From: Sphyrna mokarran
Lineage: Eukaryota
Direction: 5' to 3'
NCBI GenBank assembly: GCA_024679065.1
Contig: JAGIQG010000004.1
Location: 62,930,001-62,994,000, forward strand
DNA length: 64,000 bases
The notes below the pieces were generated by a model. That model saw only the letters and a list, made by a program, of their open reading frames with translations. It was not told the DNA's origin and did no database searches. A program made the position numbers and the translations under genes. Within the stretch, counting starts at the first letter, position 1, and each line of letters opens with the position of its first letter. Of this stretch, positions 31,443 to 55,505 are shown piece after piece.

Positions 31443-31843
31443 GGTAATTGTAAGTTAATCCCATATTTACCAGTTTCCCAAATTTGTTTCTGAGACAAAT
31501 AAGCCTGATGGGTAAGACATTTACTACCAATGGACTCTTCCTTAGACCAAAAATGAATGGGTTCTTTAGAATCAATTACTCTAAAAACACTGGCAAAATG
31601 CAATATATCAACCGTCTTAGCATGTGAAGAAAATTGAATGCTTTGTTAGCACATGTAGAATTTTACTAAGCTCAATTTTAGTACGTAAATGCAGCCTTCT
31701 CATTTGTCTGCACACCAGGTTACAACTCTTGAAGCCATGTGATTCCTAACGTCACAACTAAATTTGAGATTATATTGGAGACACAGGCTCGGTGCTCACC
31801 CACTCAGGCTCGCGCTGTGCTCTACCGATTTACGTCAATAGAC

Positions 31844-31898
31844 ATGTTAAAGACTCTGTCACTCTGGGGCATTTGTTTCCTGGGAATTTGGTGTCCAG
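31844..31898 (+). CDS. Exon 1, signal peptide MLKTLSLWGICFLGIWCP
   Basis: gacATGtta start, 18 hydrophobic codons plus 1 nt, donor CCAG|GTAGAA. Phase 1 matches the acceptor at 32223. Confidence 0.85.
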
Positions 31899-34800
31899 GT
31901 AGAATGTTATATTTGTTATTGATGATTAAACCACCCTGAACAATAACTGATAACGGAGGCGAGTTGATGTTCTGTCGAGTACAGTTTTCTGCTATTTAAA
32001 TTTGACTAAATGTTTTAGTGTTATGTCTTATTTGACAAAGGTAACTATGTATAAGAAAGGCAACATTAATTATATTAATGGAAAAACACATTTATAAAAA
32101 GGAGATCATTCTGATAGGTACAGTGAATTACTAATATATTAATAGTCTGGTCTCGCAATGGCATTTATAGCCATGCCGATTACTTCTGAGTATCAACGAT
32201 TTATTCCGACTTTTGTTGATAGTTTTTACATGCAGTTTGGACACGGTGACACGAAAGAAGGTGCTGAGAGGTACAAACGTTACGTTCGGATGTCCTTTTT
32301 CTTTTCACCTCGATATTTCGAACATAATCGCTTACTGGTGGAAAGATGGTAATAAAACATTTCTTCAAGAAGACGGCAGAAAAGCTTTCAGTATAAAAAG
32401 AGCCGGCGCCTACCTCCATCTTCTGAATGTAACTGTTCCGGATTCTGGAACTTATTTTTGTGTAGTGAAGCATCAACGTCGAACAATTGGAGAAATAATT
32501 TCTGCGCGACTTTTTGTATATGGTAAGTGTTACTGCAATTAAGAAGAAAACTTTAGTTGCTGCAGGTATTCCAATTGTGTTTTATGAAGGCGCTTAAACA
32601 ATAAATAAGTGAACAAAATAATACAGCTCTCTAGCAAAAGGTGAAGTCTGGTGGCGATTTCAATCTGAAAGTCACACCTCAGGCGAGAAGCAAAGGCCTT
32701 CATGAATAATCTCAACTGGAATTAAGCCCGCGCTGTTAACGAAGCTCTGTATCATAAACCAGCCGTTTAGCCAACTGAGCCATCTGAACCCAAAGATGTC
32801 ACCTAAACAGCGACTTGAACCCTAGACCATCGGCTTAAAAATCTGATATTCTACTGACTGAGCAACCCAGGTAGCTTTCTAATACACTAACTGGAGCAAC
32901 AAGCGCTTGCGAATTTGGACGACAACTAGCACCAGCATATCTGAAAACAAGCGGATCACCTACATCTCCTCTGTTTGGTGCGTGGTTTATAATGGAAAAT
33001 TAATGCAAGGCTGGAAGTTAATGTGCATTTTCCGGGTCTGCCTCTACGTCAGTGTAAATAATTCCACCTAATGTTATATATTTTACATATCCAAAGATGT
33101 GCGGGTTAGGTTGATTGGCCATACTAACAATTGTCCCTTAGTGTCCTGAGATGAGTAGGTTAGAAGGATTAGCAGTTAAGTATGTAGGGATACGGAGGTA
33201 GAGCCTGGGTGGGATTGTGGTCGGTGCAGACTCAATGGGCCAAACGGCCTGTTTATGCACTGTAGGGTTTCTATGATTTTATGAAATCATTTAATTAAGT
33301 ACAAGAACCACATTCCTTTTTTTCTGATTATATGTTTATTTAAAATCCATTACATATTTAAAGGTTCATTTATTTTTGAAAGAAGTAGAGTCCCAAATCC
33401 TCTCATTGAGCCAGGACGCTTCTAAATTTTGCGAAACTGGTTGAAACACCAACTGAGTAACTGGGGAGATTCACGCGCTAACACACGTGTACCTGTCCAG
33501 AAAGTTGTCCGAATATTATCCTTTTTTATCCAAAAGGAAAATGAATGCCCTTAATGCTCGAATAGAACGTGACCTGTAGTATTTTTATAACTGAAGTCCA
33601 GGATGCCAATTCGACTACATTAACCAAGTTAAAAGGATGCCCATTGTAAACGAGTTCTTTTAAATATAAAATGAGTGTATAATTATATAAGGAAGGAAAC
33701 TGAGAACAATATACCTGGATCAGTGACGAACAAAGTAGACTGGAGGCCATTTACAATCAACAATGACATGGTCCAACTTCTACGAGTGAATATAGGTACT
33801 AAGGAACGCAAGAAGAGAAAGTAGTTAAATAATTTATATTCCCCTTTTTATTTACTTTTTGTTTGTTTTGAATCTAGTTGCCCCCGTACCCCTGAAGGTT
33901 GTCTCCATGCCATTCGAAGAGACTGCATCTGCATTTCTAAGACTCCAGTGTCGAACTGCTGAGTTTCACCCCAAGGACTTTAACCTCACCTGGCATAAAA
34001 ATGGCACCGAAATTACAACAGGATTTATAACTGAACAACAGGAAACGGCAAAAGGACTGTATGAAGTTATTAGTTCCTTGGAAGAGGCACTGCCAATTGA
34101 GCAGGGCACAGTTTACACGTGTCAAATCCACCACGTTTCTATCTCCGGTCCAGCAAATGGCAGCTATACTGTCGGCAACGTAGGTAAGACTAATTCATAA
34201 GTGGTATATATATATATAACTTAATCCAGCAGCAGTTGGGTTGTCACTGCACATGTTGAACAAAGAAAAAGTAAGTAGGTTACTGCAATTTACTCCCATT
34301 CTATTGTGGCAGTTCCGAATTCTCAAGTCGTTCAGAAATGACAACGTAGCCCACGGGGTGGATTCACTATCCAAGCCGAATTAAGAGAACATTTTTAGGA
34401 CAGAAAAATGTGCATAGATTGATGAAAACGACAGATAAATGTGAAGGAGATCTTAGAAGAATACATTAAGAAATAAACACTGAAGCAGATGTGACACGAA
34501 TCTGTCAGATCTATAGTAACAGTTGATATTTTGTAGTAGCAGGAATGACAGTTTATACATCGGAGGCAGAGCCAAATTAAGTTAATTGAACAAAAATCTG
34601 TTTAGTATGTTGTTTCTCAAATACTTAGCAATGAAAGGGGATTGAGTGTAAAGAAATACTGAAGGGAATTAGCGTTCAAAATCAGTGCTGAGATGTTGAG
34701 CGTATGCCCACCTGTTGGATAGACTATACATAGAAATGGCCTCTATATTTCGGAAAAGTACCTTAAAAAGAATATAAGGAACGAACAACCCATTTTAAAA

Positions 34801-37800
34801 ATATGTTTACTACGATCCACTTTTCAGATATAACGGGAAACAAGTCGTGGAATTAACGGTGTTTTGTATCTAACTGGGATGTTGAAAACATTCAAGGAGA
34901 ATGGTCAGTTAAAAGGAACAAAGAGCAAAACAGCACGGGAAACAGGCCCTTCGGACTAATGAGCCCACGCCGTCACCCCGACGTTCCCACATCTACCCGT
35001 GGTCCCTGTCTATGTTTATAGATCGATGGATTCAAAACCAAATTGGAGACAATTTAAGGAGAATTTGTTTTGCCAATTACAGCACATCCCAGGGATGTGG
35101 GAGGAAACCGGAGCACCCGGAGAAAACCCATGCAAGCACGGGGAGAATGCGCAAACTCCCACAGACACAGGCCCAAATCCATGTATCTGCATAGGACAGC
35201 AATAGTCACTGAGCTGTCATGTTACTCATCAAATGGTCCAGGTCAAGCATACACTAACGACGTGAAGCACTAGGATACTCTCGAAAAAAGAATCCAAGAG
35301 CAGCCCTCTCACGACCCATCGCGTGTATGCCCCTTATTAGACAACGAGGTGGACCAAAGCATCTGTAGGATAAAAACAAATACATCAATATCATCATCTA
35401 TTTACACACTTCCCAGAGACTCCCAAGGGTCATGATCCCTATTTTAAATCAGTTTTCTATACCCCTCCATTCCCATTCTGTCATGTGCCCATCTAAGCAT
35501 TTCTTAAATAACTCCAGAGTGCCTGTTTTCACCACTTTACTTGGCAGCGCATTCCATACCCCTACCACCTTCTGTGTGAAAAAACTCTCTCTAGCATCCA
35601 AATTACACCTTTACCCCCTCACTCTAAGCCCGTGACCCCTCGTGCTATTTGTGTCCATCCTAGGAAAAAGCTTAACCCTGTTTATCTATACTCCTCATAA
35701 TCTTGTACACCTCTATTGATCTCCTCTAAGTCTACATCTTTCTAAGGAAACAGTTTCAATTTGCCTAACCTCTCCTCGTAACTCAGGCCTTCCATACCAG
35801 GCAGCATCCTGGTAAACCTCATCTGCACTCTCTCCAGTGTCTCCATGTCCTTCCGATAGTAAGGCGACCAGAACTGGACGCAGTATTCCAAATGAGGTCT
35901 AACCAATGTTTCTACAACAGCAACATTAAAAGCCAGCTCTTGTACTCTATACCCCTTCCTATAAAGGCTAGCATACCAAATGCTTTCTTCACAACCTTCT
36001 CCAACTGCTCTGCCACCTTCAGAAACTTGTGCACCTGCACCCCCAGCTCCCTCTGTGTTTCTATACTCTTAATAGTAAGTCTACCCTTTATCCTATACCT
36101 CCCCCCTACCTTCTTTCTCCCGAAATGCATCAGGATTGAATTCCATCTGCCATCTATCTGCCCAAGCTACCAGCCTATCTATGTCCTGCTGCATCGCCTG
36201 ACAATGCTCTTCACTATCCGCAAGTCCAGCCATCTTTGTATCATCTGCAAATTTGTTGATCACTCCACTTACTCCCTCTTCCAAGTCATTTATATATATT
36301 ACAAATAGAAGAGGTTCCAGTACCGAGTCCTGCGGCACACCACTAGTGACCGACCTCCAGCTAGAAAAATACCCTTCCGCTGTTACTCTCTGTCCCCTAT
36401 TACTAAGCCAGTTACTTATGCGTCAGCGCATATTCTTCCTAAACATATTCATCGTGCATATTATATAAATTAGCTATGTTAGTCTCTGATCACTTATAAA
36501 GTTTTTCTGTCCTCATGATATCGAAGGATATTTAAGTTATGTCCTTCAGTCTTATTGATAGCACCATTAAATATAAGAGGCAGAGACAAACTGTAACAAA
36601 GTTTTGAAGACTTATTGAAAAATAAAAATTAAGTAAGAAAATGGGGAATGAATCAAGACAGATGATTGGTGGGGGGTGGGGGGAGAGCGGGATGGAGTAG
36701 CATTTTAGTGACAGCAATCACAACATGGAACAATTTAGGCTGGTTATGGACAAGGAAATAAACAAGCTACAAAAAAAAAGTCTTTGGATGGGGAGAATGG
36801 ATTTTAGTAAAATGAAACATAATTTACCCGAGTTATACTGGGAACAGTTACTAATGGGGAAATCTACAAAATATGCAGTTGGGTGCATTCAAAAAGGAAA
36901 CGAGGAAGGTGCAAGTCTACATACTCCCTCTAAGGTAATGTGTGTTAACAAAAAGCCCAGAAACCCATGGGATAAAATGAGAATGAAAAGTAAGGTTTTT
37001 AAAAAGTGCAAGTGGAACAAATCAATAGAGATATTAGTGAGGTATAGAAAGTGAGGGTGGAGCTTAAGAAAGCAATTAGGGGATATCATAGAAATCATTC
37101 AATACAGAAAGAAGCCATTTGACCTATTGAGTCTGCACCGACCACAATCCCATGCAAACCCTACCTCCATACCCATACATATTTTACCCTCTAACCTATG
37201 CATCTATGGTCAATTTAGCCTGGCCAATCAACTTAACTAGCACATCTTTGAACTGTGGGAGGAAACCCACCCCAACATGAGGAAAATGTGTAAACTCTAC
37301 ACAGACAGTGACCCAGTTGGGAATTGAACTCAGGTCCCTGAAGCTGTGAAGCAGCAGTGCTAATCACTGTGCTACTGTGCCACCCCACTATATGAGAAAG
37401 ATCTGATGGGGCAAAAAAGGAAAATCCCAAGATATTCTATAAATATATGAATAGGAAGAAGATAGTTGGGAAAGGGTAAGAACCATTAGGGACCAAGGAG
37501 GCAATCTGTGGGTGGTACCAGAAGACAATGGTAAAGTGTTGAATGAATATTTCATTTGTCTTCACCCAAGAAAATGAGGACAAATATGTGGAATTCAGGG
37601 AGAAAATTGACAAATTTAAGGGCAAATTGACATAGAGAGCAAATTGACATAGGGAGGACAAGGTGTTGGAAGTATCAGCAGCTTTAAAAAATAAGTAAAT
37701 CTCTAGGCCCGGATGCACTGTGTTCTAGACTGCTGTGGGAGGGAAGAGAAGATTGCAGAAGCTCTGATCCAAATTTTTACTTCCTATCTGACCATGAGGA

Positions 37801-40800
37801 GAGTCATAATGTGGAGGTGCTGGTGTTAGATTGGGGTAGAAGGCTCACAATACCAGGTTAAAGTCCAACAGTTTCATTTGGTAGCAAAAGGCACTAGCTT
37901 CCAGAATGCTGTTCGTTCATCAGGTCAGTGGGAGTTCTGGGATAAGCAAGAGGCTGTGGTTGGTAGGGACTCGGTCGGCTGAATAGCCTCCTTCTGCATT
38001 ATAGGATTTTTAAGTTGGTTTATTAGTGTCACAAGTAGGCTTAACTCTGCAATGGAGTTACCATGAAAATCCCCTAGTTGTCACACTTGATTCAAAGTAC
38101 AGCAGTGTCAATAGCTGTAAGGTTAGAAAGATCCTGAATGAATACTTTGCGTCCGTATTCACAAAGAAGAGGGGCTTATTGATAGGTCCTGTCTCTAAGG
38201 GAGCTGTAGACCAGTTGAGGGAAATATCCATACTGAGGGAGGAAGTGTTAGAGCTTGGGTAGCATTAAAACTGATAAATCTCTGGGGCATTTATCCCAAG
38301 CTGCTTAGGTAGGTACAAGGTGAAATTGCTGGGCCCCTGGAGAGAGTGCAGAGGAGGTGTACCAGGATGCTGCCTGGTATGGAAGGTCTGAGTTACAAGG
38401 GGAGGTTAGGCAAATTGGGGCTATTTTTCTTAGAAAGATGTGGACTTAGAGAAGATCTAATCGAGGTGTACAAGATTATGAGGGGTATAGATAGAGTAAA
38501 CAGGATTAAGTTTTTTCCTAGGATGGACTCAAATAGCATGAGGGGTCATGGGCTTAGGGTGAAGCGGGGTAAGGTGTAATTTGGATGCTGGAGGGAGTTT
38601 TTTCACACAGAGGGTAGTGGGAGTATGGAACGCACTGCCAAGTAAAGTGGTGGAGGCAGGCACTCTGGAGTTTTTAAGAGATATTTAGATAGGCACATGA
38701 ACAGAATGGGAATGGAGGGGTATAGAAAACTGATTTAAAATAGGGATCATGTGTGTAAATTGTCGATGATATTGATGTATTTGTTTTATCCTACCGGTAC
38801 TTTAGTCCACCTTGTAGTCTAATAAGGGGCATACATACAATGGGTTGTGAGAGGGCTGCTCTTGGATTTTTTTTGAGAGTGTCCTAGTGTTTCACATCGT
38901 TAGTGTGCGCTTGACCTGGACCATTTGATGGGCAACATGACAGCTCAGTGACTATCGTTGTGCTGTACAGATACATGGATTTGGGCCTGTGTCTGTGGGA
39001 GTTTGCGCATTCTCCCCATGTTTGCGTGGGTTTTCTCTGGGTGCCCCGGTTTCCTCCCACATTCCAAAAATGTGCTGTTCCCCCTAAATTGTCTTAGATT
39101 TGGTTTCAATGCATAGATCTATAAACATAGACAGGGATCATGGGTAGAAGTGGGAACATCGAGGTGGTGGCATGGGCTCGTTGGGCCGAAGGGCCTGTTT
39201 CCTGTGCTGTTTTGCTCTTTGTTCTTCTTTGTTCTTTGAAAACAATTCAGATCTTTACCATTTGGAGTTAAGAAGTCTGCCCAGATAAGTGTCAGTGCAT
39301 ATTTTTCTGAAACATATTCATCATACATATTATGTTAATTGGCTATGTTAGTGTCCAGTCACTTATAAAGTCTTTCTGTTCTCATGACATCAAGGGTGAA
39401 TTCCCACTTACACGATGAAGAAGCAGCGCTGTGAAAACTAGGGGTTTTTGTTACCAAATAAACCTATTGCACTTTAACCTGGTATTGTGAGACTTATTAC
39501 ATAGGGGATGTGCCAGATGACTGGAGAACACCTAGTATGGTTCTGCTATTTCACAAGAATTGTAGAGATAAACCAGGGAACTACAGACCAGTGAGTTTCA
39601 CATCAGTGCTAGGGAAGCCATAACATAAACATCTGAAGGAGGGCATCTACCTCTATTTGGAGAGGCGAAGCTTGATCAGGAATAGTCAGTATGGCTTCAG
39701 AGGGAGGTCATGTTTAACAAATTTGATTAAATTTTTTGAGGAGGTGACCAGGTATCTAGATGAGGATAGTGCAGCTCATGTGTTTTATATGGTTTTCAGC
39801 AAAGCCTTTGACAAGTTCCCACAGGGGAGATGAGTAAAGAATGTAAATTCACATGTGATAAAGGGTAATTTGATAAGGTGGATTCAATAATGGCTCAGTT
39901 GTTGGAGACGGCTGATGGCTGCTTCAATGATTCAAAGCCAACATCCAGTGGTGTACCACAGGGATCTGTGTTGGGTCTCCTATTATTTGTTATTTATATA
40001 AATGACTTTGATAATTATGTTGAGGGGTAGGATTAGTAAGTTCCGCATGACACACAGATTGGATGGATGGGTATCAATGAGGAGAAGTGTGTTAGGCTGC
40101 AAGATGATATAGATGGAATGGTCAAATGGGCAGATAAGTGGCAGATGGCATTTAATTCTGAAAAATATGAGGCGATAACTTTGAAAGGAATAATTAGACA
40201 TCAAAATATTCAATCAATGATCAGACACTAGAAAATTTTGTGATACAAAAGGATTTTGGCATTTGTGTCCATGATCTCTGAAAGTGGAAGGGTATATTGA
40301 AGTGTGGTCAAAAAGGCATATGGGACACTTGCCTTTATCAATCGAGGCACAGATTACAAAAGCAGAGAAGCTATATTGGATTTGTAGGACTTTAGTGAGG
40401 CCCCAGCTAGAGCTCTGTCTGCAGTTCTGGTCACCGCATTATCAGAAGGATGTGACTGCACTGCAGGGAGGCAGAGGTGATTCACCAGGTTGCCTGGGAT
40501 GAAAAATATTACGTTATGAAGAGGTTGTGTAGGCTTGGGTTGTTTTCTTCAGAGCAGAAGACTGAAGGATGACCTGATCAAGGTACCCAAGATTATGATG
40601 GACAAAGACAGAGCGGATATGGAGCAGCTGTTCCCCTTAGTTGAAGTGTCAATCATGAGAGGACATAGGTTCAAGGTGAGGGGCAGGAGATTTTAGAAAA
40701 AGAAAAATCTTTTTTTACGTAGAGTATGGAATGCACTGCCTGAGAGGGTGATGAAGACAGATTGCTTCATATCGTTTAAAACGTACCTAGATGAGTACTT

Positions 40801-42383
40801 GGTATATCATAACATTCAGAGTTATGGGCCAGCTGCTGGCAGATTTGATTAGGTGGGAGTTCAGGTGTTTCTAATGTGTTGGTGAGGTCTTTATAGGCTG
40901 AAGGGCCTCTTCTGTGCTGTATGAGTCGACACAGTTGTGGCACAGTGATTAGTACTGCAGCCTAACAGCACCATGGATCCAGGTTCAATTTTAGCCTTGG
41001 GTGACTTTCTAAATGGAATTTGCACATTCTCCACATGTCTGCATGGGTTTGTTCCACTTTCCTCACACAGTTTAAAAAAAAATGTGCAGGTTAAGTAGAT
41101 TGTCTGTTAGTGTCAAAGGAATTTTCTGGGTAAATCTCTGGGGATACGGGGATAGGACCTAAGAGGGATTGTTGTCAGTGCAGGCTTGATGGACTGAATG
41201 GCATTCTTGAACTTCTATGATAATGTCCTTAAACTGTAAAATAAAATTTAAAAAATTGAAGAGATGTTTGTATTTCTTGTCTCTCTTTAATTGCCCTTGA
41301 GTTACTGATTGACTTGGTAGCCAACTCAGAAGATGGATAATAATCAATCAATCACATTGCTTTGGGATTGGAGTGACATATAAACCAGATGAGGTGGAGA
41401 TGGAAGATTTTGCTCCATGAAGGACATGATTGAACCAAATGGATGTTTATGATAATCAATGATAGGTGTGGTTGCCAGCAATGTGATTAGTTTTCTGTTA
41501 TTAATTGAATTGTATTCAAATTTTACCAACTAGCCATAATGAAATGTGAAACCATGTCCTCAAAACATTAACTTGGACTCTGGAGCACTGGTCTTGAGAT
41601 ATTATGGCCACACCACCAGGTGCTTGCTTGCTAAATTTTACTGCTATGCAAAACATAAGATACATGTTGAAAGTAGCAGGTAGATAAGTTCTGTTTCTGG
41701 TCTCAATAATCATAAATATTATCATAATCCATGGATAACGAGGAGAGACTAAATCGGCTAGGTTTGTACTCTTTGGAGTTTAGAAGGCTGAGAGGGGATG
41801 TTGTAGAGATGTATAAGATAATAAAGGGGATGGATAAGATAGAGGTTGAGACACTCTTCCCGCTTAGCAAAGATAACAGGACTAGAGGGCACAGCCTCAA
41901 GATTGGGGCGGCGGGGGTTGGGGTTTGTGGTTCAGATCAGAGTTGAGGAGGAATTTCTTCATGCATCGGATGGTGCTTCTTTGGAATTCTCTGCCTGATG
42001 AAGTGGTGAAGGCTTCCTCACTGAATATGTTCAAGTCAAGAGTGGATAGGGTTTTTGATTGACAAGAGAATTAAGGGTTAAGGGGAGAAAGCAGGAAAGT
42101 GGCACAGAACCACTACAGATCAGCCATGATCTTATTGAATGGTGGGGCAGACTCAAGGGGCTGGATGGCCTACTCCTGCTCCTATTTCTTATGTTCTTAT
42201 GTTCTTATCATTGTTTAGTTTCTGACTTTGAGTTGTGAATCATTGATTATCTTATCTTTTGCAGATTACCACTTTGTATTTCCTATCCACCTGATTTACC
42301 GATCCACACTGGGGTTATTAGTACTTCTTGTACTAATAGTGATCAGCTTTGAACACATTGCATCAGAAAGGGCCCATTGGTAA
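31844..42383 (+). CDS. Spliced Ig-superfamily type I membrane receptor, leader-V-C1-TM(Arg)-short tail, 259 aa; join(31844..31898,32223..32522,33878..34183,42265..42383)
   Basis: Four exons with GT-AG boundaries, all introns phase 1 as typical of IgSF domain-per-exon genes. 55+300+306+119=780 nt, an open frame of 259 aa plus TAA. Six N-glycosylation sequons (NVT, NKT, NVT, NLT, NGT, NGS). Confidence 0.85.
32223..32522 (+). CDS. Exon 2, Ig V-like domain (VFTCSLDTVT...NVTFGC...YWWKDG...DSGTYFC...ARLFVY)
   Basis: Acceptor cttttgttgatag|TT and donor TATG|GTAAGT. B-strand Cys, C-strand Trp and D-x-G-x-Y-x-C motif are present; the G strand is in the same exon. Confidence 0.92.
32625..32791 (-). 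mobile_element. tRNA-derived SINE (non-HE1 type)
   Basis: The minus strand begins gggttcagatggctcagttggctaaacgg (A-box-like), followed by a B-box-like segment and a short body. Confidence 0.55.
32800..32872 (-). pseudogene. Degenerate tRNA-Lys(UUU) copy in the V-C1 intron
   Basis: The reverse complement aligns without gaps to the vertebrate tRNA-Lys-TTT sequence (GCCCGGATAGCTCAGTCGG...GGTTCAAGTCCCTGTTCGGGCG), about 57/73 identities by hand; stems are disrupted. Confidence 0.8.
33088..33285 (+). mobile_element. 3' half of an HE1 SINE
   Basis: ccaaagatgtgcgggttagg...ttctatgattttatga. Confidence 0.8.
33878..34183 (+). CDS. Exon 3, Ig C1-set domain (LRLQCRTAEFHPKDFNLTWHKNG...GLYEVISSL...VYTCQIHHVS)
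   Basis: Long polypyrimidine tract with ctag| acceptor, donor GTAG|GTAAGA. C1 hallmarks L-x-C-x4-F-x-P-x4-L-x-W, Y-x3-S-x-L and Y-x-C-x-I-x-H; 56 residues between the two Cys. Confidence 0.93.
34913..36415 (-). mobile_element. 5'-truncated CR1 family B
   Basis: KFADD ORF 36093-36338; 3'UTR matches 1721-2260. Confidence 0.9.
36690..37800 (+). mobile_element. Old CR1 fragment with a nested HE1 SINE (37087-37387, minus)
   Basis: CR1 ORF2 linker region (ENPKIFYKY) on both sides of the SINE. Confidence 0.7.
38338..39238 (+). mobile_element. 5'-truncated CR1 family B
   Basis: ORF 38346-38579 plus family B 3'UTR and tail. Confidence 0.9.
39500..40925 (+). mobile_element. Degenerate CR1 (RT to 3' end)
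   Basis: [15 protein letters not shown] and GVPQGSVLG motifs. Confidence 0.85.
40929..41220 (+). mobile_element. HE1/V-SINE
   Basis: gtggcacagtgattagtactgc head, V core and tail. Confidence 0.8.
41730..42208 (+). mobile_element. CR1 3' fragment ending ~55 bp before the TM exon acceptor
   Basis: LYSLEFRRLRGD; (TTCTTATG)n tail. Confidence 0.85.
42265..42383 (+). CDS. Exon 4, transmembrane segment and short tail DYHFVFPIHLIYRSTLGLLVLLVLIVISFEHIASERAHW*
   Basis: Unique island between LINEs with acceptor cttatcttttgcag|. Phase-1 reading gives a hydrophobic helix with Arg (CGA 42300-42302). It ends TGG TAA, overlapping a possible donor TG|GTAAGA. Confidence 0.8.
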
Positions 42384-42431
42384 GAGAATTTTAAGACAGG
42401 TTTATAACATTCAGCAACATTTGTTGACATA

Positions 42432-43510
42432 CAAAGAACAAAACAGCACAGGAAACAGGCCCTTCGGCCCAACAAGCCCGCGCCGCGACCCCAATGTTCC
42501 CATCTCTACCCGTGATCCCTGTCTATGTTTATAGATCTATGGATTAAAAACCAAATTTGAGACAGTTTAGGGAGAATTTGTTTTGCCAATTAGACTAAGG
42601 ACATATCTTTGGGATGTGGGAGGAAACCTGAGCCCCCAGAGAAAACGCATGCAAGCACGGGGAGAATGCACAAACTTCCACAGACACACGCCCAAATCCA
42701 TGTATCTGCACAGCACAGCGATAGTCACTGAGCTGTCGTGTTGCCCGTCAAATGGTCCAGATCAAGCGTACACTAACGACGTGAAGCACTAGGATACTCT
42801 CCAGAAGAATCCAAGAGCAGCCCTCTCACGACCCATCGCGTGAACACCCCTTGTTAGACAACAAGGTGGACCAAAGCACCTGTAGGATTAAAAACAAGTA
42901 CATCAATATCATTGTCTATTTACACACTTCCCAGGGACTCCCCAGGCTTATGATCCCTATTTAAATCAGTTTTCTGTACCCCTTCATTCCCATTCTGTTC
43001 ATGTGCCATCTAAGTATTTCTTAAATAACTCCAGAGTACCTGCATCCACCATTTTACTTGTCAGCGCATTCCATATCCCCACCACCCTCTATGTGAAAAA
43101 TCTCCCTCTAGCATCCAAATTATACCTTACCCCCCTCACCCTAAGCCCGTGACCCCTCATGCTATTTCAGTCCATCCTAGGAAAAAGCTTAACCCTGTTT
43201 ATCTATACCCCTCATAATCTTGTACACCTCCATTAGATCTCCTCTAAGTCTACATCTTTCTAAGGAAAACAGTCCCAATTTGCCTAACCTTTCCTTGTAT
43301 CTCAGACCTTCTATACCAGGCAGCATCCTGGTAAACCTCCTCTGCACTCTCTCCATAGTCTCCACGTCCTTCCATTAGTAAGGTGACCTGAAGTGGATGC
43401 AGTATTCCAAATGAGGTCTAACCAACATTTTATACAACTGCAACATTAAAGGCCAGGTCTTGTACTCTGTACCCCTTCCTATAAAGGCTAGCATACCATA
43501 TGCTTTCTTC
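42432..43510 (-). mobile_element. 5'-truncated CR1 family B, ~50 bp after the receptor stop codon
   Basis: Family B tail, 3'UTR and RT C-terminus. Confidence 0.9.
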
Positions 43511-43624
43511 ATATTTCACAGAAGGAAGAATTGACATTGGCTCATCAATGTTGGAGATCATTGAATCAAAATTGCTATTCCCTATCACTGCTGCCAAAAT
43601 GTTTCACCTTGTACTCTATACAGA

Positions 43625-44540
43625 TAGAACATAGAACCGTAGAACAGTACAGCATAGTTCAGGGCATTCGGCCCTCAATGTTGTACTGAGCTATGTCCAA
43701 ACCCAAGATCAAGCTATCCCATTCTCTCTAATCCTGGAGTGCTCCATGTGTCTATCCAATAACTGTGTGAAAGTTCATAAAGTCTCCGACTCCATTATCG
43801 CAACAAGTAGTGCATTTCACATCCCAACCATTCGCTCAGTAAAGAATCTACCTCAGACATTCCTCCTACATCTCCCACCATGAACCTTATTGTTATGCCC
43901 CCTAGTAATGCAAAGAAATACTTTCTGCATGTCCACATTATCTATCCCCGTCATCATCTTACAAACCTCTATTAAGTCACCTCTTATCTTCCTCTGCTCT
44001 AAAGAGAAAAGCCCTAGCTCCTTCAACTGTTCCTCATAAGACCTCCAAACCAGGCAGCATCCTGGTAAGCCTCCTTTGCACTGTCTCCATTGCTTCCATA
44101 TCCTTCGTATAGTGAAGTGACCAGAACTGAGCACTATATTCCAAATATGGTCTCACCAACGTCCAGTATAGTTGCAGCACAATCCCACGGCTCTTAAACC
44201 ATTGATAAACGCTAACACACCATAAGCCTTCTTCACAGGTCTACCTACTTAAGTGATAACCTTCAGAAATCTGTGGTGTGAACCCCAAGATCCTCTGTTC
44301 CTCCACTTTCCTCAGAACCCTGCCATTAATCCACATTCAAGTTTGTCCTACCGAAATGAATCACCTTGCATCTGTCAGGTTAAAATCCATCTGCCACTTT
44401 TTGGCCCAGCTCTGCATCCTATCAATGTCTCTTTGCAGCCTGCAACAGCCTTCCACCTCATCCACTACTCCACCCGTCTTGGAGTCATCAGCAAATTTAC
44501 TAACCACCCTTCAGCCCCCTCTTCCAAGTCATTGATAAAA
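43625..44540 (-). mobile_element. 5'-truncated CR1
   Basis: ORF 43853-44134 (LFSLEQRKIRGDL) and tail. Confidence 0.85.
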
Positions 44541-45134
44541 TTCCCTATATTAATGCATTTTGTTACGTGCTAGCCTGTCTAATCCTATACAAGTTAATTT
44601 CTGTTATTGTAACTGTTTGTCGTTCCTTGGTATTAACTGCATTCTTTTAAAATATGTCTCTGTATTCCAAATTCCAAGCCATCAATTTTCCAGTCTGTAG
44701 AACTAGTATTTATCATGAATTTCACTCCCTGTCCTTAAACTACTATTTAGTCCAAGTGGACCCAAGACCTTCCTATTCCAGAAGTGTCAATTTTATCAAT
44801 AAACCTTTCACTGGCACTTTTAAACTGCCTTCTTAAAGGCAACAAGTGTCATACTCCATTCATCAATTTCTTCTGTGACTTCATTAAAAAATCAGTTACG
44901 TTATTCAACTATAATCTGCCTTGTACAAATTTGTGCTGGTTTGACATAATTATCTGCAACACCCTACTTCTCCTCTTCCAACTCCTCCCTCCCTCCATCA
45001 GTAGCTGTTGATTATCTGCCATGATTACTGTTTCCTAAAACATACCCACTATTAATGGTAAATAAATTAGCCAGTAATTTCCAGGACTATGTTTTCTTTT
45101 TAAAATAAGGATACTGCATTTCCCATTCACTTGT

Positions 45135-46500
45135 CATAGAACATGGAACATTACAGTACAGTACAGGCCCTTCAGCCCTCGATATTGCATTGACCGGTGG
45201 AATGAATCTAGTGACCCTCTAACCTAATCTACTCCAATGTTATCCATATGCCTATCCACTGACCATTTGAATGCCCTTAAACTTGGTGAGTCCACAACTG
45301 CTGCAGGCCAGGCATTCCGTGCCCTTACTACCCTCTGAGTAAAGAACTTACCTCTGACATCCATCCTATAATTACCACCCTTCAATTTAAAGCTATGTAC
45401 CCTTGTGTTAGCCATCACAGTCTGAGGAAAAAGGCTCTCACTGTCCAACCTATCTAACCTTCTAATCATCCTGTATGCCTCAATTAGGTCACCTCTTAAC
45501 CTTCTTCTCTCTAACGAAAATAACCTCAAGTCCATCAGAATTTCCTCATAAGACCTTCCCTCTACACCAGGCAACATCCTGGTAAACCTCCTCTGCATTC
45601 TTCCTAGTGCTTCCACATCTTTCTTATAATGCGGTGACCAGAATTGTACACAACACTCCAAGTGCAGCTGCACCAGAGTTTTGCACGGTTGCAATATGAC
45701 CTCAAGGCTCCGAAATTCAATCCCTCTACCAAGAAAAGCTAATATACTGTACGCCTTCTTAACAACTTTCTCAACCTGGGTGCCAACTTTCAGGGATCAC
45801 CGACATCTCTCTGCTCCTCGACACTACCAAGAGTCCTTCCATTAGCCCTATATTCTGTACTCCTGTTATTCTTACTAAAGTGAATCACCTCACACTTTTC
45901 CGCATTAAACTCCATTTGCCTCCTCTCACCCAGCTCTGTAGCTTATCTATGCTCCTCTGCAAACTGTAACATCCATCCTTACTGTCTACAACTCCTCCAA
46001 CTTTGGTGTCATCAGCAAATTTTCTAACCCATCCTTCATCTAGGTCATTTATAAAAATGACAAACAGCAATGGCCCCAAAACAGATCCCTGAGGCACACC
46101 ACTTGTAACTGAACTCCAGGTTGAATATTTCCCATCAACCACCGCTTTCTGTCTTCTATCACCTAGCCAATTCCTGATCCAAACTGCTAAATCACCCTCA
46201 ATCCCATGGTAGGTTTCTGCAGTAGCCTACCATGGGGAATCTTATCAAATGCTTTGCTAAAATCCATATACACTACGTCAACTTACCCTTGTTCACCTCT
46301 TTGGTCGCCTTTTCAAAGAACTCGATAAGGTTTGCAAGGCATGACTTACCCTTCACAAAACTGTGTTGATTATCCCTAATCAATTTATTTCTTTCTAGAT
46401 GATTATAAATCCTGTCTTCTGGCACCTCCACCATACCTAGAGAAGATTTGAAGATTAGGACAAGCAATCCAATAATCTCCTCCTTTTCTTCCTTTAGCAA
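45135..46500 (-). mobile_element. 5'-truncated CR1 (family A-related)
   Basis: ORFs 45224-45694, 45885-46142 (FADD) and 46273-46500. Confidence 0.9.
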
Positions 46501-47149
46501 TTGAGATGCAACACATTGGGAGTAGGCGATTTAAATCTTGGCAAATTTTCCAGTATCTCCTCCCTGTTGATTTTTTACTCTCGATTGTTTCTACTTTCTC
46601 TGCTTCTGACGAGTCCTCCTAGTCAGTTTTTTTTTTAAATATTTCATGTAATACTGGAATTTATGACAAGATTAATTAATGGCTAAAATAAATAAATTTG
46701 GCAAAAATAGGGATGTGTCAAGCCACAGCATGTGAGAACTAATAGATGCCAGTGTTATCCACAGAAAGCACGTCTGCAGTAATTGACAGCTGCTTGAGAA
46801 GCTTCAGCTCAGATTCATCAACCTGGAGGCTGAGTTATGGACAATGTGATAGGCCAGGGAAGGAGGTAGTTACATGCATGAATTGTTGTAGAGGACCTTA
46901 GAATATAATCACCTGGTTTGAAAAATGGTCATTGGCTGTTGAAGAGGGGGTAATTGTAGCTGAGGTGGTAAGGGGACCCACAGGGTCTAACTGCAGGAGT
47001 GGCTGCCTCTACAATTATCCATCAGGTTTGACGTTCTTTCAGATTGTTTGGATGAAAGTGCGGGCTTAAGGATGCATGAGCTTATTGAACACGGCAATGT
47101 GATACGTTAAGACATTTAAGCGGGGCGAACACAATAGAACAGAACAGTA

Positions 47150-47420
47150 TGTGGTGGCATAATGCTAGGGGCCCATGCTCGATTCCCAGCTTGGGTCCCC
47201 ATCTGTGTGGAGTCTGCATGTTCTGCCTGTATGTGTGCAGGTTTCCTCCAGGTGCTCCAGTTTCCTCCCACAGTCCAAAGATGTGCTGGTTAGGTTGACT
47301 GGACATGCTAAATTGTCCCTTGGTGTCAGGGGGACTAATTAGGATGAATTTGTGGGGTTTATGTGTATAGGCTGGGGTGGCCTATCCCTGAATTGCCTCA
47401 TTCTGCATGGTAGAGAATCT
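47150..47420 (+). mobile_element. HE1/V-SINE inside an old CR1 ORF1 remnant (about 46715-48350)
   Basis: V core; the flanks read VVWDSVVR...CCLP (esterase remnant). Confidence 0.7.
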
Positions 47421-48392
47421 AAAACAAAACAAAATAGATTAGAACATAGAATAAAATCCCTGCAGTGCAGAAAGTGACCATCCTACCATCATGCCTACAT
47501 TGACAGCAATCCTGCCTAGCTTTATACCCGTAACCCCACTTTTTACCCTGCTAATCCCCCTCACACAAAGGAGCCAATCACTATGGCCGATCATTCTAAA
47601 TTGCACATCTTTAGAAGAATTTAATGGTAGTATGGGATAGTGTAGTGAGGGAAATTGAAACTATCGTCTGTAGTAAGAACGGTGAATACAGCCTGCTGTG
47701 TTGCCTGCCTGTGCCAGAGTTTGAGACATCTGCTTCCAACTGGAGCAGGAGGGTGGGTCCGATTCTCTTAGTATATGTATATACTGATGAGAAAGGTAGA
47801 ATAGGAAAAAAAGATTCTGCATAGATATTTTGAAGACAAAGACTCTAAAGTAAGCAAAAATACTTTATGGAGTGTTACTTTAGCCATGTGCAACTTGGCA
47901 TAGGGTACATAATATTAGGCAGATGAACACATGGCTCAAAAAACTGGTGTGGGTGAAATGGGCTTCAGTTCGTAGGACAGTGGGATCGGTATTGGGGAAA
48001 TTGGAATTTATACTGCTGGGAATGGCCTAAATCTGAACTGTGGTGGAACCAGAGATCTTGAAACTACTTAACTAGTCAAATAAAGAGGGGTTTGAAGTAA
48101 ATAGAGAAGGGGGTGGTTCTGGAAAGATGACATGTACACTTCCAAAATAAATGGATATATAAGTATTACAACTCATCTATTTAGGTAAAGATTGACAAAG
48201 TATGACAGGAAGTGATAGAGTGTACAAACATAAAATAAATAGCCGCAAATTGATTCAAATAGAGAAAAATGGTAAAAGGGAAAAAATGGTTCTTTACTTC
48301 AATGCACATAGTATTTGGCACAGATTTCAGGAAATAATGGCAAATATTGAGGTTAATTTGATTTGATATGATTTATCGTTATCACATGTATT

Positions 48393-49442
48393 AGAACAAA
48401 GATAAAAGAGCAAAACAGCACAGGATACAGGCCCTTCGGCCCAATGAGCCCGTGCCGCCACCCCAATGTTCCCACTTCTACCCACGATCCCTGTCCATGT
48501 TTATAGATCTATGGATTAAAAACCAAATTTGAGACAATTTAGGGAGAATTTATTTTGCCAATTATCCTAAAAGCGCATCTTTGGGATGTGGGAGGAAACC
48601 TGAGCACCCAGAGAAAACCCACGCAAGCATGGGGAGAATGTGCAAACTCCCACAGACACACGCCCAAATCCATGTATCTGCACAGCACAGCGATAGTCAC
48701 TGAGCTGTTGTGTTGCCCATCAAATGGTCCAGGTCAAGCATACATGACGACATGAAGCATTAGGATACTCTCGAAAAAAAATCCAAGAGCAGCCCTCTCA
48801 TGGCCCATCGCGTATATGCCCCTCATTAGACAACAAGGTGGACCAAAGCACCTGTAGGATAAAAACAAGTACATCAATATCATCATCTATTTACACACTT
48901 CCCAGGGACTCCCAAGGCTCATGATCCCTATTTTAAATCAGTTTTCTGTACCCCTCTATTCCCATTCTGTTCATGTGCCCATCTAAGTATTTCTTAAATA
49001 ACTCCAGAGTGCCTGCCTTCACCACTTTACTTGGCAGTGCATTCCATACCCCCACCACCCTCTGTGTGAAAAACTCTCTCTAGCATCCAAATTTACCTTA
49101 CCCCCCTCACCCTAAGCCCTTGACCCCTCATGCTATTTGAGTCCAAGCTAGGAAAAAGCTTAACCCTGTTTACTCTATTTATACCCCTCATAATCTTGTA
49201 CACCTCTATTAGATCTCCTCTAAGTCTACGTCTTTCTAAGGAAAACAATCCCAAATTGCCTAACCTCTTCTCGTAACTCAGACCTTCCATACCAGGCAGC
49301 ATCCTGGTAAACCTCCTCTGCACTCTCTCCAGAGTTTCCACGTCCTTCCGTTAGTAAGGTGACTAGAACTGGACGCAGTATTCCAAATGAGGTCTAACCA
49401 ACATTTTATACAACTGCAATATTAAAGGCCAGCTCTTGTGTA
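48393..49442 (-). mobile_element. 5'-truncated CR1 family B
   Basis: ORF 49093-49341 plus family B 3'UTR and tail. Confidence 0.9.
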
Positions 49443-50167
49443 AGTATACAATAAAAGAGTATTGTTTCATAAATGTCACATAGACAGAGTATACTGTACA
49501 TAGAGAAGAAAGGAGAGAATGCAGAATGTTATAGTAACATCTAGCGTATAGAGAAAGCAACTTAAAATGAGGTAGGTGCATTAAGACGTCTGTTGGCAGC
49601 AGGTAAAATGTTGCTCTTCAGGCGGTTGGTATGTAACCTCAAATGTTTCCTCAATGGAAGAAGGTGGAAGAAAATATGCCCAGGGTGCATGGGGTCCTTG
49701 ATTATGCCGGCTTCTTTGTGGATATGATCTTATAAGCATTACTTGAATGATTACAAGGAGTTGAAGCTGGAAACTAAATATTCAGGGCATATGACTTTAC
49801 TTGTCTTCATGAAGTGTTATTAGTACAAGGTGGATTAATTATGATGGCAAAGAAATGATCTTGAATTAGAAGATGTAGAGTCCATATGGGGTGTTGGAAA
49901 GAAACAAAAGAAGAATGCAATGGTGGAAGTAATCTATAGACTCCTTAGCAGTAATAAATGTAGAATAGGACATGGAGATAATGAGGCAGTGTATTAATAA
50001 AGTGTGACTCTAATCTTCATGTGGATTTGGTAAATCAAATTGGCAGAGAAAGACATGAGGAAGAATTCATAAATTGTATTCAGGACAGTCTCCTAGAACC
50101 ATATGTTGTGGACCTAAACCGGGGTAAAACAAATTTGGATTCTTTAACGTGAAATGGGACAATCTAA

Positions 50168-54951: not shown

Positions 54952-54953
<2 letters not shown>

Positions 54954-55029
<76 letters not shown>
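54954..55029 (+). repeat. (CA)38 microsatellite
   Basis: Perfect dinucleotide run. Confidence 0.98.
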
Positions 55030-55030
<1 letters not shown>

Positions 55031-55505
55031 CATGCCTCATTGCTACTCCCTCCCCCTATCTCTCTCCACACACAGACATGGCTGCTCGCTCACCTCATGC
55101 TCCCATGGATCCACATATCCAGAATGCAATCCCTCCATCGCTTAAACAAATCGTTCTCACTGCTGTCTTGCAGAGATCTAACATTGTGATGAAATGCACA
55201 ACCCCAGCTTGTGATTATTCCCTCTCTTGAATAAGAGCCTTGAGTATTGCACTCCGTGGACACAGCAGCTAATCGATTAGGAGTCCTGTGTATAGCAACC
55301 CGCCTGGACAGCCTATTGAATGGTAGCCAATTAGTACCCTGAGGAATGAATGACACTCAATTGAATGAAGCCTTCAAAATCTCTCACAAACATTTGTTGC
55401 CACTGGGTCCTTGACTGGCTATATTCACTGCACGTGCATTCCTCTAATAAGCCAGAGCTGTATATTAGCTGCAGGAATGGACGCACAGCCAGTCACACCA
55501 CAAAG

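What the first reader, a model, noticed from the sequence alone, without database searches (positions are those of the whole stretch)
31844..42383. Non-rearranging V-C1-TM immune receptor with antigen-receptor-like architecture
Seen: an intact four-exon, all-phase-1 gene encoding leader, V-like domain, C1-set domain, TM and a ~10-aa tail. Known: C1-set domains are largely confined to Ig, TCR, MHC/B2M and a few relatives (tapasin, SIRP, B7-H6). Germline-joined V(J)-C1 genes, such as shark UrIg and amphibian VJ-C1 genes, are discussed as relics of the pre-RAG receptor. Inference: this has the layout of a single TCR chain or membrane-anchored light chain but is fixed in the germline. It fits no named family cleanly: SIRP has V-C1-C1, NKp30 has V only, tapasin has an extra N-domain and an ER-retention tail, and TCR needs RSS and a connecting-peptide Cys. 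It may belong to an uncharacterised cartilaginous-fish receptor family. Automated pipelines would probably mislabel it as SIRP-, B7-H6- or light-chain-like.
Basis: partly seen in the sequence, partly recalled or inferred. Interest (0 to 1): 0.85.

Follow-up and report, generated by a model that had tools for sequence, protein, structure and literature searches.

The report
Shark activating SIRP-like V-C1 receptor gene
This is an intact shark gene for a small cell-surface immune receptor of the switch-on type, one member of a large, unstudied family found across sharks, rays and chimaeras that resembles both mammalian SIRP receptors and a germline-fixed antibody light chain.

Summary
Four + strand exons (31844-31898, 32223-32522, 33878-34183, 42265-42383) have GT-AG borders, are all phase 1 and sum to 259 codons plus a stop. 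They encode a leader, a shortened V-like Ig domain, a C1-set domain (Pfam 3e-11), and a transmembrane segment with an Arg and a 10-residue tail.

All four exons match predicted proteins of other sharks. The nearest is Scyliorhinus torazame scyTo_0012035 (V 66/99, C1 84/101).

The gene belongs to a multigene family in which all 27 named representatives are chondrichthyan. Members carry either an Arg transmembrane segment with a short tail, or SIRP-alpha-like ITIM tails. This one is the activating type.

The orthologue's best solved relative is SIRP-alpha. The family profile matches an Ig light-chain V-C as well or better.

Earlier scan notes report similar genes elsewhere in this genome, including nearby on this piece. 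I found no paper on the family. Verdict: a new variant of a known kind, of moderate interest.

The parts
31844..31898 (+). Exon 1: start codon and signal peptide (18 codons + 1 nt, phase 1)
   Evidence: Sequence. 14 of 15 residues identical to the N-terminus of S. torazame P0159.
32223..32522 (+). Exon 2: shortened V-like Ig domain with the G (J-like) strand in the same exon; 3 N-glycosylation sequons
   Evidence: Pfam ig 3.2e-8, V-set 6.2e-6. 66/99 identical to P0159. Sister to P0159 in the V tree, 100/95*. No RSS motifs.
32486..32521 (+). Degenerate J-like G strand: the second Gly of the family's G-x-G-T-G is replaced
   Evidence: That Gly is conserved in at least 90% of 27 aligned family members (G109 of P0159). 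The window differs at that position.
33878..34183 (+). Exon 3: C1-set Ig domain; 3 N-glycosylation sequons
   Evidence: Pfam C1-set 3e-11. PDB hits: MHC-I alpha3 1.6e-11, UrIg2 7.6e-11, SIRP-alpha 2e-10. 84/101 identical to P0159. C1 tree.
34184..42264 (+). Intron 3, 8.1 kb, holding decayed retrotransposon pieces
   Evidence: ORFs with weak RVT_1 matches, both below Pfam's cut-off, at 36093-36335 (-) and 39878-40027 (+). No further family exon found by tblastn.
42265..42383 (+). Exon 4: stalk, transmembrane segment, 10-residue tail, stop TAA 42381-42383
   Evidence: Hydropathy scan. 20 of 36 residues identical to P0159 and aligned to four other homologues.
42300..42302 (+). Arg codon (CGA) near the outer end of the membrane segment
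   Evidence: Arg stands in the same alignment column in 11 of 11 rows: the window plus 10 Arg-type homologues from sharks, rays and a chimaera.
42379..42386 (+). Possible unused donor (TG|gtaaga) overlapping the stop codon
   Evidence: Sequence only. Orthologues in S. torazame and C. punctatum have tails about 35-40 residues longer. No matching downstream exon was found in the window.

Best explanation
The region holds an intact four-exon gene for a type I membrane glycoprotein. Its parts are a signal peptide, one shortened V-like Ig domain with its G strand germline-joined, one C1-set domain, a membrane segment with a conserved Arg, and a 10-residue tail with no tyrosine.

It is the orthologue, or a very close paralogue, of predicted and uncharacterised proteins in Scyliorhinus torazame and Chiloscyllium punctatum. 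It belongs to a multigene family of non-rearranging VJ-C1 receptors found in sharks, rays and chimaeras.

Family members come in two forms. One has an uncharged membrane segment and a long tail with ITIM-type tyrosines arranged as in SIRP-alpha. The other has the Arg membrane segment and a short tail. This gene is of the second, activating form.

Inferred mechanism (not shown):
- The V domain binds a ligand, probably shared with or similar to that of the inhibitory relatives.
- The membrane Arg pairs with an acidic residue of an ITAM-bearing adaptor dimer. The position near the outer leaflet suggests the FcR-gamma/CD3-zeta kind, with DAP12 as the alternative.
- The adaptor then sends an activating signal that the ITIM-bearing paralogues oppose.
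For: Gene model:
- Canonical splice sites, phase 1 throughout, 259 codons.
- All four exons are matched by homologues.

Domains:
- Pfam and solved-structure searches.

Orthology:
- V 66/99 and C1 84/101 identical to P0159.
- In separate V and C1 trees the window's exon is sister to P0159 (100/95* and 98/70).
- In both trees it sits inside the same starred 14-row subfamily, which holds both Arg-type and ITIM-type members from sharks and rays.

Paired family:
- 63 family proteins were retrieved at phmmer E <= 1e-25.
- ITIM-type tails and Arg-type membrane segments are visible in the sequences.
- Arg is in the same column in 11 of 11 Arg-type rows, including Callorhinchus.

Faster change in V than in C1, as expected of a ligand-binding domain:
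- End branch 0.28 against 0.11.
- Differences from P0159 are densest in the B-C and F-G stretches.

Taxonomic range:
- Of 30 representatives looked up, 27 carry names and all 27 are chondrichthyan.
- All 24 strong hits of the alignment search are chondrichthyan.

Closest solved relative of the orthologue:
- SIRP-alpha 1.2e-13 and SIRP-gamma 2.1e-12.
Against: - There is no transcript evidence. No RNA run was listed.
- Adaptor pairing and ligand binding are inferred by analogy only.
- In this gene the second Gly of the J-like G-x-G, conserved in at least 90% of the family, is lost.
- The tail is about 35-40 residues shorter than in the two nearest orthologues. The TAA aligns to a Tyr of the C. 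punctatum protein when read through. Some decay therefore cannot be excluded.
- My automatic labelling of tail types was rough. For example, P0008 was wrongly flagged Arg-type. Counts of the two forms across the family are therefore not given.
- The orthologues are computer-predicted proteins, not characterised ones.
- Genomic loci of the orthologues could not be fetched and no structure could be predicted.
Confidence: 0.72

Rival explanations
1. The family is simply the cartilaginous-fish SIRP family, co-orthologous to tetrapod SIRP-alpha/beta/gamma, which has one C1 domain instead of two. On this view the gene is a SIRP-beta equivalent.
For: - The best solved relatives of the orthologue P0159 are SIRP-alpha (1.2e-13) and SIRP-gamma (2.1e-12). 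The alignment runs unbroken from the V domain's F strand through the J-like strand into the C1 domain.
- The inhibitory paralogues carry paired tyrosine motifs spaced as in SIRP-alpha.
- NCBI's pipeline names many members SIRP-alpha-like or SIRP-beta-1-like.
Against: - The architecture is V-C1, not V-C1-C1, in the window. No second C1 exon was found by tblastn or by the Cys-Trp-Cys pattern scan.
- The same holds in the 27 aligned members.
- With the family profile, an Ig light-chain V-C stretch scores higher (68.6 and 64.6 bits) than SIRP-alpha d1-d2 (55.0).
- The membrane residue is Arg near the outer end. SIRP-beta, as I recall it, has a mid-membrane Lys.
- No non-chondrichthyan protein appeared among the strong hits.
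- Synteny with the tetrapod SIRP cluster could not be tested.
Confidence: 0.3
2. The family is a surviving non-rearranging sister of the antigen-receptor chains (like UrIg or PRARP). The protein would work as a dimeric, antigen-receptor-like chain rather than as an ordinary paired innate receptor.
For: - The family profile's best single V-C1 match among solved structures is an Ig light chain. UrIg2 is also among the top five chains.
- The family has a J-like G-x-G-T-G strand directly followed by a C1 domain.
- Published discussion treats VJ-C1 genes as possible remnants of the precursor (passages read in PMC10751288, and PMC12227049).
Against: - Score differences among IgL, SIRP-alpha and UrIg2 are modest.
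- This gene has lost the second Gly of the G-x-G bulge that V-V pairing uses.
- It has no membrane-proximal Cys. The only extra Cys lies at the end of the likely signal peptide.
- None of the 8 listed MHC notes of the scan (8 of 33) is on this piece (unverified notes).
Confidence: 0.12
3. The gene is a decaying or non-functional copy in a fast-turning-over receptor cluster.
For: - The tail is cut short by a stop that aligns to a Tyr in the C. punctatum protein.
- The J-like G-x-G is degenerate.
- Intron 3 is 8.1 kb long and full of retroelement debris.
- A repeat lies about 60 bp after the stop.
- There is no expression evidence.
Against: - All four exons are open and all six splice sites are canonical.
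- The canonical Cys pairs, Trp and D-x-G-x-Y-x-C are kept.
- The V end branch (0.28) is about the same as that of its S. torazame sister (0.24).
- Tails as short as 8 residues are normal in Arg-type relatives: Heptranchias P0160 and P0161, and Callorhinchus P0192.
Confidence: 0.1
4. The gene is a B7-family ligand (B7-H6/NCR3LG1-like) rather than a receptor.
For: - It has a V-C ectodomain.
- NCBI names several relatives NCR3LG1-like.
- B7-H6 is among the solved hits of P0159 at 8e-9.
Against: - B7-H6 scores weaker than SIRP-alpha (1.2e-13) for the same query.
- The family has a J-like G-x-G-T-G strand, which, as I recall, B7 V domains lack.
- A membrane Arg with a short tail, and ITIM-tailed paralogues, are receptor features.
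Confidence: 0.04

Closest known systems
SIRP family (SIRP-alpha, -beta, -gamma)
   Same: - Non-rearranging V domain with a J-like strand, followed directly by a C1-set domain.
- A paired family with ITIM-tailed inhibitory members and members that have a short tail and a charged membrane residue.
- SIRP-alpha is the best solved hit of the orthologue.
   Different: - One C1 domain, not two.
- The V domain is shortened between the C and D strands: 55 residues lie between the two Cys.
- Arg near the outer end of the membrane segment. SIRP-beta's Lys is recalled, not tested.
- Named family members were found only in cartilaginous fishes.
Ig light chain / TCR chain (V-J-C1)
   Same: - The order of V, J-like strand and C1.
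- The family profile's best single V-C1 stretch in the PDB is an Ig light chain.
- Phase-1 exon borders.
   Different: - No RSS and no separate J segment.
- The J motif is degenerate in this gene.
- It has its own membrane anchor.
- There is no connecting-peptide Cys.
NKp30 (NCR3)
   Same: A non-rearranging VJ-type domain, an Arg in the membrane segment and a short tail. These NKp30 features are recalled. NCR3 is called a nonrearranging MHC-linked VJ gene in PMC12227049 (passage).
   Different: - The window's gene has a C1 domain, which NKp30 lacks.
- NKp30 was not among the 60 best solved hits shown for the V exon, the orthologue or the family profile.
UrIg / UrIg2 of elasmobranchs
   Same: A non-rearranging V followed by C1, in cartilaginous fish. 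UrIg2 is a top solved hit for the C1 exon at 7.6e-11.
   Different: UrIg2 has ten Ig domains and forms disulfide-linked homodimers (PMC12227049, passages). The window's gene has two Ig domains. Its V-C1 stretch scores lower against the family profile than IgL or SIRP-alpha.
PRARP genes (Fu et al. 2019)
   Same: [quoted passage not shown]
   Different: Not compared.

Membership tests
SIRP | N-terminal V domain with a J-like G strand, encoded unsplit | tested here: inconclusive
   The V and G strand lie in one exon. The family has G-x-G-T-G in at least 90% of 27 members. This gene has lost the second Gly, and its V-set match only just reaches Pfam's cut-off.
SIRP | Two membrane-proximal C1-set domains (V-C1-C1) | tested here: not met
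   There is one C1 exon only. No second Ig exon was found between exon 3 and exon 4 or elsewhere in the window. The 27 aligned relatives also have a single C1.
SIRP | Closest sequence relatives are SIRPs | tested here: inconclusive
   For orthologue P0159, SIRP-alpha is first among solved chains at 1.2e-13. For the family profile, an Ig light-chain V-C stretch scores 68.6 bits against 55.0 for SIRP-alpha d1-d2.
SIRP | Binding of CD47, or synteny with the tetrapod SIRP cluster | not testable with these tools
Paired activating receptor (functional class) | Basic residue inside the membrane segment, conserved among relatives | tested here: met
   The Arg codon is at 42300-42302. Arg is in the same column in 11 of 11 rows.
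Paired activating receptor (functional class) | Short tail without tyrosine motifs, and close relatives with ITIM tails | tested here: met
   The tail is 10 residues with no Tyr. ITIM-tailed members such as P0006, P0162 and P0169 lie in the same starred 14-row subfamily.
Paired activating receptor (functional class) | Physical association with an ITAM adaptor | not testable with these tools
   This needs co-expression experiments.
Rearranging antigen receptor (IgL/TCR) | V and J as separate segments flanked by RSS | tested here: not met
   There is no CACAGTG/CACTGTG heptamer and no consensus nonamer in 31801-34300. The G strand is in the V exon.
NKp30 (NCR3) | A single V-type domain with no C domain | tested here: not met
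   A C1-set exon is present.
B7-H6 / B7 family | B7-type V and C domains as nearest relatives | tested here: not met
   B7-H6 scores 8e-9 against 1.2e-13 for SIRP-alpha with the same query. It is not among the 60 best shown for the family profile.
Tapasin / TAPBPR | Large N-terminal domain before the Ig domains | tested here: not met
   The leader exon splices directly to the Ig exon, and homologues start with the same leader. TAPBPR hits lie at 1.6e-8 over the Ig part only.
UrIg / UrIg2 | V followed by a long chain of C1-type domains, forming a disulfide-linked dimer | tested here: not met
   There are only two Ig exons, and no stalk Cys.
PRARP | Sequence relatedness to the chicken PRARP genes | not tested
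   No PRARP sequence or paper was available. The name was seen only in passages.

The most novel reading that the evidence does not exclude
The chondrichthyan VJ-C1-TM family is the closest living non-rearranging sister of the Ig light-chain and TCR V-C1 chains, and is not a SIRP offshoot. Its Arg-type members, such as this gene, would keep the ancestral way of signalling through a membrane charge paired with CD3-zeta/FcR-gamma-type adaptors. That would make them a working model of the receptor that the RAG transposon split.
Probability: 0.1. Interest if true: 0.85.

Novelty: new variant of a known kind. Interest (0 to 1): 0.55.

Why it matters
Non-rearranging VJ-C1 genes are the material for ideas on how antibodies and T-cell receptors arose. 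So far the discussion rests on SIRP, NKp30, PRARP and the shark UrIg genes.

The family described here spans the whole class and has many genes. It has clear switch-on and switch-off forms, and its V-C1 profile matches an Ig light chain at least as well as SIRP. No paper on it was found in the searched library.

This gene gives a clean, intact example of the activating form. It has orthologues in other sharks, and an Arg membrane module shared with chimaeras. This suggests the paired design predates the split between elasmobranchs and holocephalans.

In practical terms, it shows that the mixed database names (SIRP-like, NCR3LG1-like, Ig lambda-like, tapasin-related-like) refer to one family that deserves a single name and a proper phylogeny.

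Tried and rejected
- Other copies in the window. tblastn of the four exon translations found only the exons themselves. A weak match at 7120-7185 (E 0.071 for the window's V exon; E 1.4 for P0006) sits next to stop codons and was dropped as chance.
- More exons. A hydropathy scan of 34185-50000 and a Cys-Trp-Cys pattern scan of the whole window gave no further credible Ig or membrane exon. tblastn with eight family proteins found no exon for the longer tails of P0159 and P0017, and none for an ITIM tail.
- RNA evidence. The look-up of sequencing runs listed no run.
- Word-index searches. The C1 exon alone found nothing, a limit of the length window and word index.
- ESM Atlas. It gave only generic C1-set/SHPS1 clusters for the C1 exon and generic I-set/V-set/IL1RAP clusters for the V exon.
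- Papers. Six searches and passages in PMC12227049, PMC10751288, PMC11599192, PMC8455134, PMC4451681 and PMC3964593 gave no description of this family. A search for 'PRARP' alone returned unrelated uses of the acronym.
  - Flajnik 2012 (PMC3709836), Flajnik 2023 (PMC10530332) and Ohta & Flajnik 2015 (PMC4594805) are not held.
  - Fu 2019 was seen only as a reference.
  - Supplements were closed and not asked for. Those of the elephant-shark genome paper and the shark MHC paper might list such genes.
- Tree with SIRP, NKp30, IgL, TCR, tapasin and PRARP references.
- MHC linkage. This rests only on unverified scan notes. The 8 notes shown, of 33, are all on other pieces.

Full report
**What is there**

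The window is a repeat-rich stretch of a cartilaginous-fish genome. It has no N runs and many reverse-transcriptase ORFs.

On the + strand, four exons can be read directly from the sequence:
- 31844-31898: start codon and signal peptide.
- 32223-32522: an Ig domain.
- 33878-34183: an Ig domain.
- 42265-42383: stalk, membrane segment and tail, with TAA at 42381-42383.

All borders are GT-AG with good polypyrimidine tracts. All three introns are phase 1.

Pfam calls exon 3 a C1-set domain (3e-11, 44 bits against a cut-off of 21). Exon 2 is a generic Ig domain (ig 3.2e-8). It only just reaches the V-set cut-off (26.8 against 26), over its C-terminal half.

Only 55 residues lie between the two canonical Cys of exon 2 (positions 23 and 79). 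It is therefore a V-like domain shortened in the C'-C'' region.

The C1 exon's best solved relatives are MHC class I alpha3 (1.6e-11), UrIg2 (7.6e-11) and SIRP-alpha/gamma (2e-10 and 3.4e-10). The V exon alone finds only generic I-set and V-set domains.

Each Ig exon has three N-glycosylation sequons. There is no RSS heptamer or nonamer between 31801 and 34300, and the G strand is part of the V exon. The gene does not rearrange.

**Is the model real?**

An exhaustive HMMER search with the V exon found 405 proteins at E <= 0.001. Many are giant multi-Ig proteins that score by summing several stretches.

Among the best 150 listed, a set of small single-stretch hits at 33-68% identity turned out to be true relatives.

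tblastn of eight of these against the window hits all four exons and nothing else of note. For S. torazame P0159 the figures are:
- leader: 14/15 identical;
- V: E 1.7e-41;
- C1: E 6.6e-54;
- membrane exon: 20/36 identical.

The distant fourth exon, 8.1 kb downstream, is thus confirmed by homology. The long intron holds decayed retroelement pieces.

I could not test splicing in RNA. No run was listed.

**What family**

Pairwise, the window's V is 66/99 identical to P0159 and its C1 is 84/101 identical. P0159 is scyTo_0012035, named only 'hypothetical protein'.

I built separate maximum-likelihood trees of the V and the C1 parts. They had 48 and 47 rows after I dropped rows more than 97% identical to one already kept. 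Rows covering less than 70% of the exon had been left out earlier.
- The window's exon is sister to P0159 in both trees (100/95* and 98/70).
- The C. punctatum protein (P0151; P0017 is its shorter near-identical cluster member) joins them in the C1 tree (98/98*).
- Both trees place them in the same starred 14-row subfamily (100/99* and 100/98*).

That subfamily holds two kinds of member:
- Arg-type members: Heptranchias, and the rays Pristis, Hemitrygon and Mobula.
- Members with long tyrosine-motif tails: Heterodontus P0006 and P0162, and Stegostoma P0169 and P0170.

Other subfamilies also have both kinds. Examples are Arg-type P0075, P0080 and Callorhinchus P0192, beside ITIM-type P0101, P0115 and P0185.

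A phmmer screen of all proteins fetched gave 63 family proteins at E <= 1e-25.

Of 30 representatives whose names I looked up, 27 carry a name and all 27 are from cartilaginous fishes. The other three are unnamed short contigs.

A search with an alignment of 27 members returned 24 strong hits, all chondrichthyan. There was then a gap from 2.4e-66 to 6.7e-8. That search depends on shared words, so distant bony-vertebrate kin could be missed.

The names given by pipelines are a mixture: SIRP-alpha-like, SIRP-beta-1-like, NCR3LG1-like, Ig lambda-1 light chain-like, tapasin-related protein-like, one MHC class II beta-like, one CDON-like, and uncharacterized.

**The activating signature**

The membrane exon carries an Arg (codon 42300-42302) five or six residues into a 22-residue hydrophobic stretch.

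In an alignment of the window with ten Arg-type relatives, the Arg is in the same column in 11 of 11 rows. The relatives span sharks, rays and the chimaera Callorhinchus. An acidic or Asn residue followed by His closes the segment in 8 of 11 rows; the three ray proteins lack it.

Tails in this group are short and not conserved:
- 8 residues in Heptranchias and Callorhinchus;
- 10 residues in the window;
- about 18-19 in P0075 and P0080;
- about 40-50 in S. torazame and C. punctatum.

The inhibitory relatives have an uncharged segment and tails with repeated L-x-Y-A-x-L and x-V-Y-A motifs, spaced much as in SIRP-alpha.

A conserved membrane charge, a motif-free tail and ITIM-tailed sisters are the classical signature of a paired activating receptor. 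Which adaptor is used is inference. I favour the FcR-gamma/CD3-zeta type over DAP12 because the Arg lies near the outer leaflet. That rule is recalled from mammalian receptors and was not tested.

**Departures in this particular gene**

- The family's J-like strand reads G-x-G-T-G, and the second Gly is kept in at least 90% of 27 members. In the window it is replaced, and S. torazame has also lost the Thr.
- The window's stop codon aligns to a Tyr of the C. punctatum protein when the exon is read on. The short tail may therefore be a recent truncation.
- A possible donor overlaps the stop, but no matching downstream exon was found.
- The only extra Cys lies at the likely end of the signal peptide. 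There is no stalk Cys, unlike in S. torazame.
- None of this breaks the frame, and the V branch is no longer than that of its sister. I rate decay as unlikely but not excluded.

**Comparison with known families**

With orthologue P0159 as query, SIRP-alpha (1.2e-13) and SIRP-gamma (2.1e-12) lead the solved chains. They are ahead of Ig heavy chains, MHC class I, B7-H6 (8e-9) and TAPBPR (1.6e-8). The SIRP alignment runs continuously from the V domain's F strand into the C1 domain.

With the 27-member profile, the best single V-C1 stretches are:
- Ig light chains: 68.6 bits in 7t62_B and 64.6 bits in 2rcj_C;
- SIRP-alpha d1-d2: 55.0 bits;
- UrIg2 V-C1: 49.4 bits.

Whole-chain scores are inflated by extra C1 domains, so I use stretch scores.

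By sequence, the family is therefore about equally near SIRP and antigen-receptor light chains. It fails the SIRP architecture, having one C1 instead of two. I file it as SIRP-like in how it probably works, but not as a shown member of the SIRP family.

It is not any of the following:
- NKp30: it has a C1 domain.
- Tapasin: it has no N-terminal domain.
- UrIg: it has two Ig domains and a membrane anchor.
- A rearranging receptor: it has no RSS.

PRARP could not be compared.

**Context in this genome**

This comes from unverified scan notes only.
- Notes on the same piece report an intact 261-residue Arg-type gene about 75 kb upstream (s1-887407).
- They also report a V-C1-TM gene with a SIRP-alpha-like four-tyrosine tail about 400 kb upstream (s1-887063).
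- Further VJ-C1-ITIM genes are noted about 8.1-8.6 Mb upstream, and clusters on other pieces.

The scan has thus found this kind of gene before on other DNA of the same genome. Two notes on my own window (s1-886818, s1-886940) agree with what I tested.

In Heterodontus and Callorhinchus many members lie on one chromosome or scaffold and have neighbouring accession numbers. This fits tandem clusters.

**Limits**

There are therefore no orthologue loci, no dN/dS, no synteny, no fold and no fold search.
- No RNA run was listed.
- No reference sequences for SIRP, PRARP, NKp30, IgL or TCR were available for a joint tree.
- Key papers were not held and supplements were closed.

**Verdict**

The gene is best read as an intact activating-type member of a chondrichthyan-wide, SIRP-like and light-chain-like VJ-C1 paired-receptor family. 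That family is present in databases but, as far as my searches reach, not described in print.

It is a new variant of a known kind, of moderate interest (0.55).

Noticed in passing
window 56368-59136 (+): An uninterrupted 922-residue LINE ORF2 with an endonuclease domain (Exo_endo_phos 4.9e-18) and reverse transcriptase (RVT_1 2.1e-34). It is possibly a young, still-coding retrotransposon copy. Many decayed copies of similar sequence lie across the window on both strands, for example 3509-4639 (-) and 11825-12879 (+).
   Followed up: partly
window 42430-42534 (+), 39119-39328 (-), 38884-39116, 35012-35273, 42567-42792: A short repeated element occurs several times around the gene. Its translations recur as 'KEQNSTGNRPFGPTSP' and 'GECANSHRHRPKSMYL'. 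One copy starts about 60 bp after the gene's stop codon and so lies in or next to the 3' untranslated region.
   Followed up: no
window 54748-55230 (+): An ORF containing a long (CA/TH)n dinucleotide-type microsatellite, translated as a run of T-H repeats. It is probably a simple repeat, not a gene.
   Followed up: no
Family proteins P0028 and P0118: Some predicted isoforms in Heterodontus and Callorhinchus join the V domain directly to the membrane segment and ITIM tail, skipping the C1 domain. This would be an NKp30-like V-only layout arising from the same genes, if the models are right.
   Followed up: no
Family protein P0162 (Heterodontus): The cytoplasmic tail holds an exact internal duplication of a block of about 70 residues that carries the paired tyrosine motifs. 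This suggests recent exon duplication in an inhibitory member.
   Followed up: no
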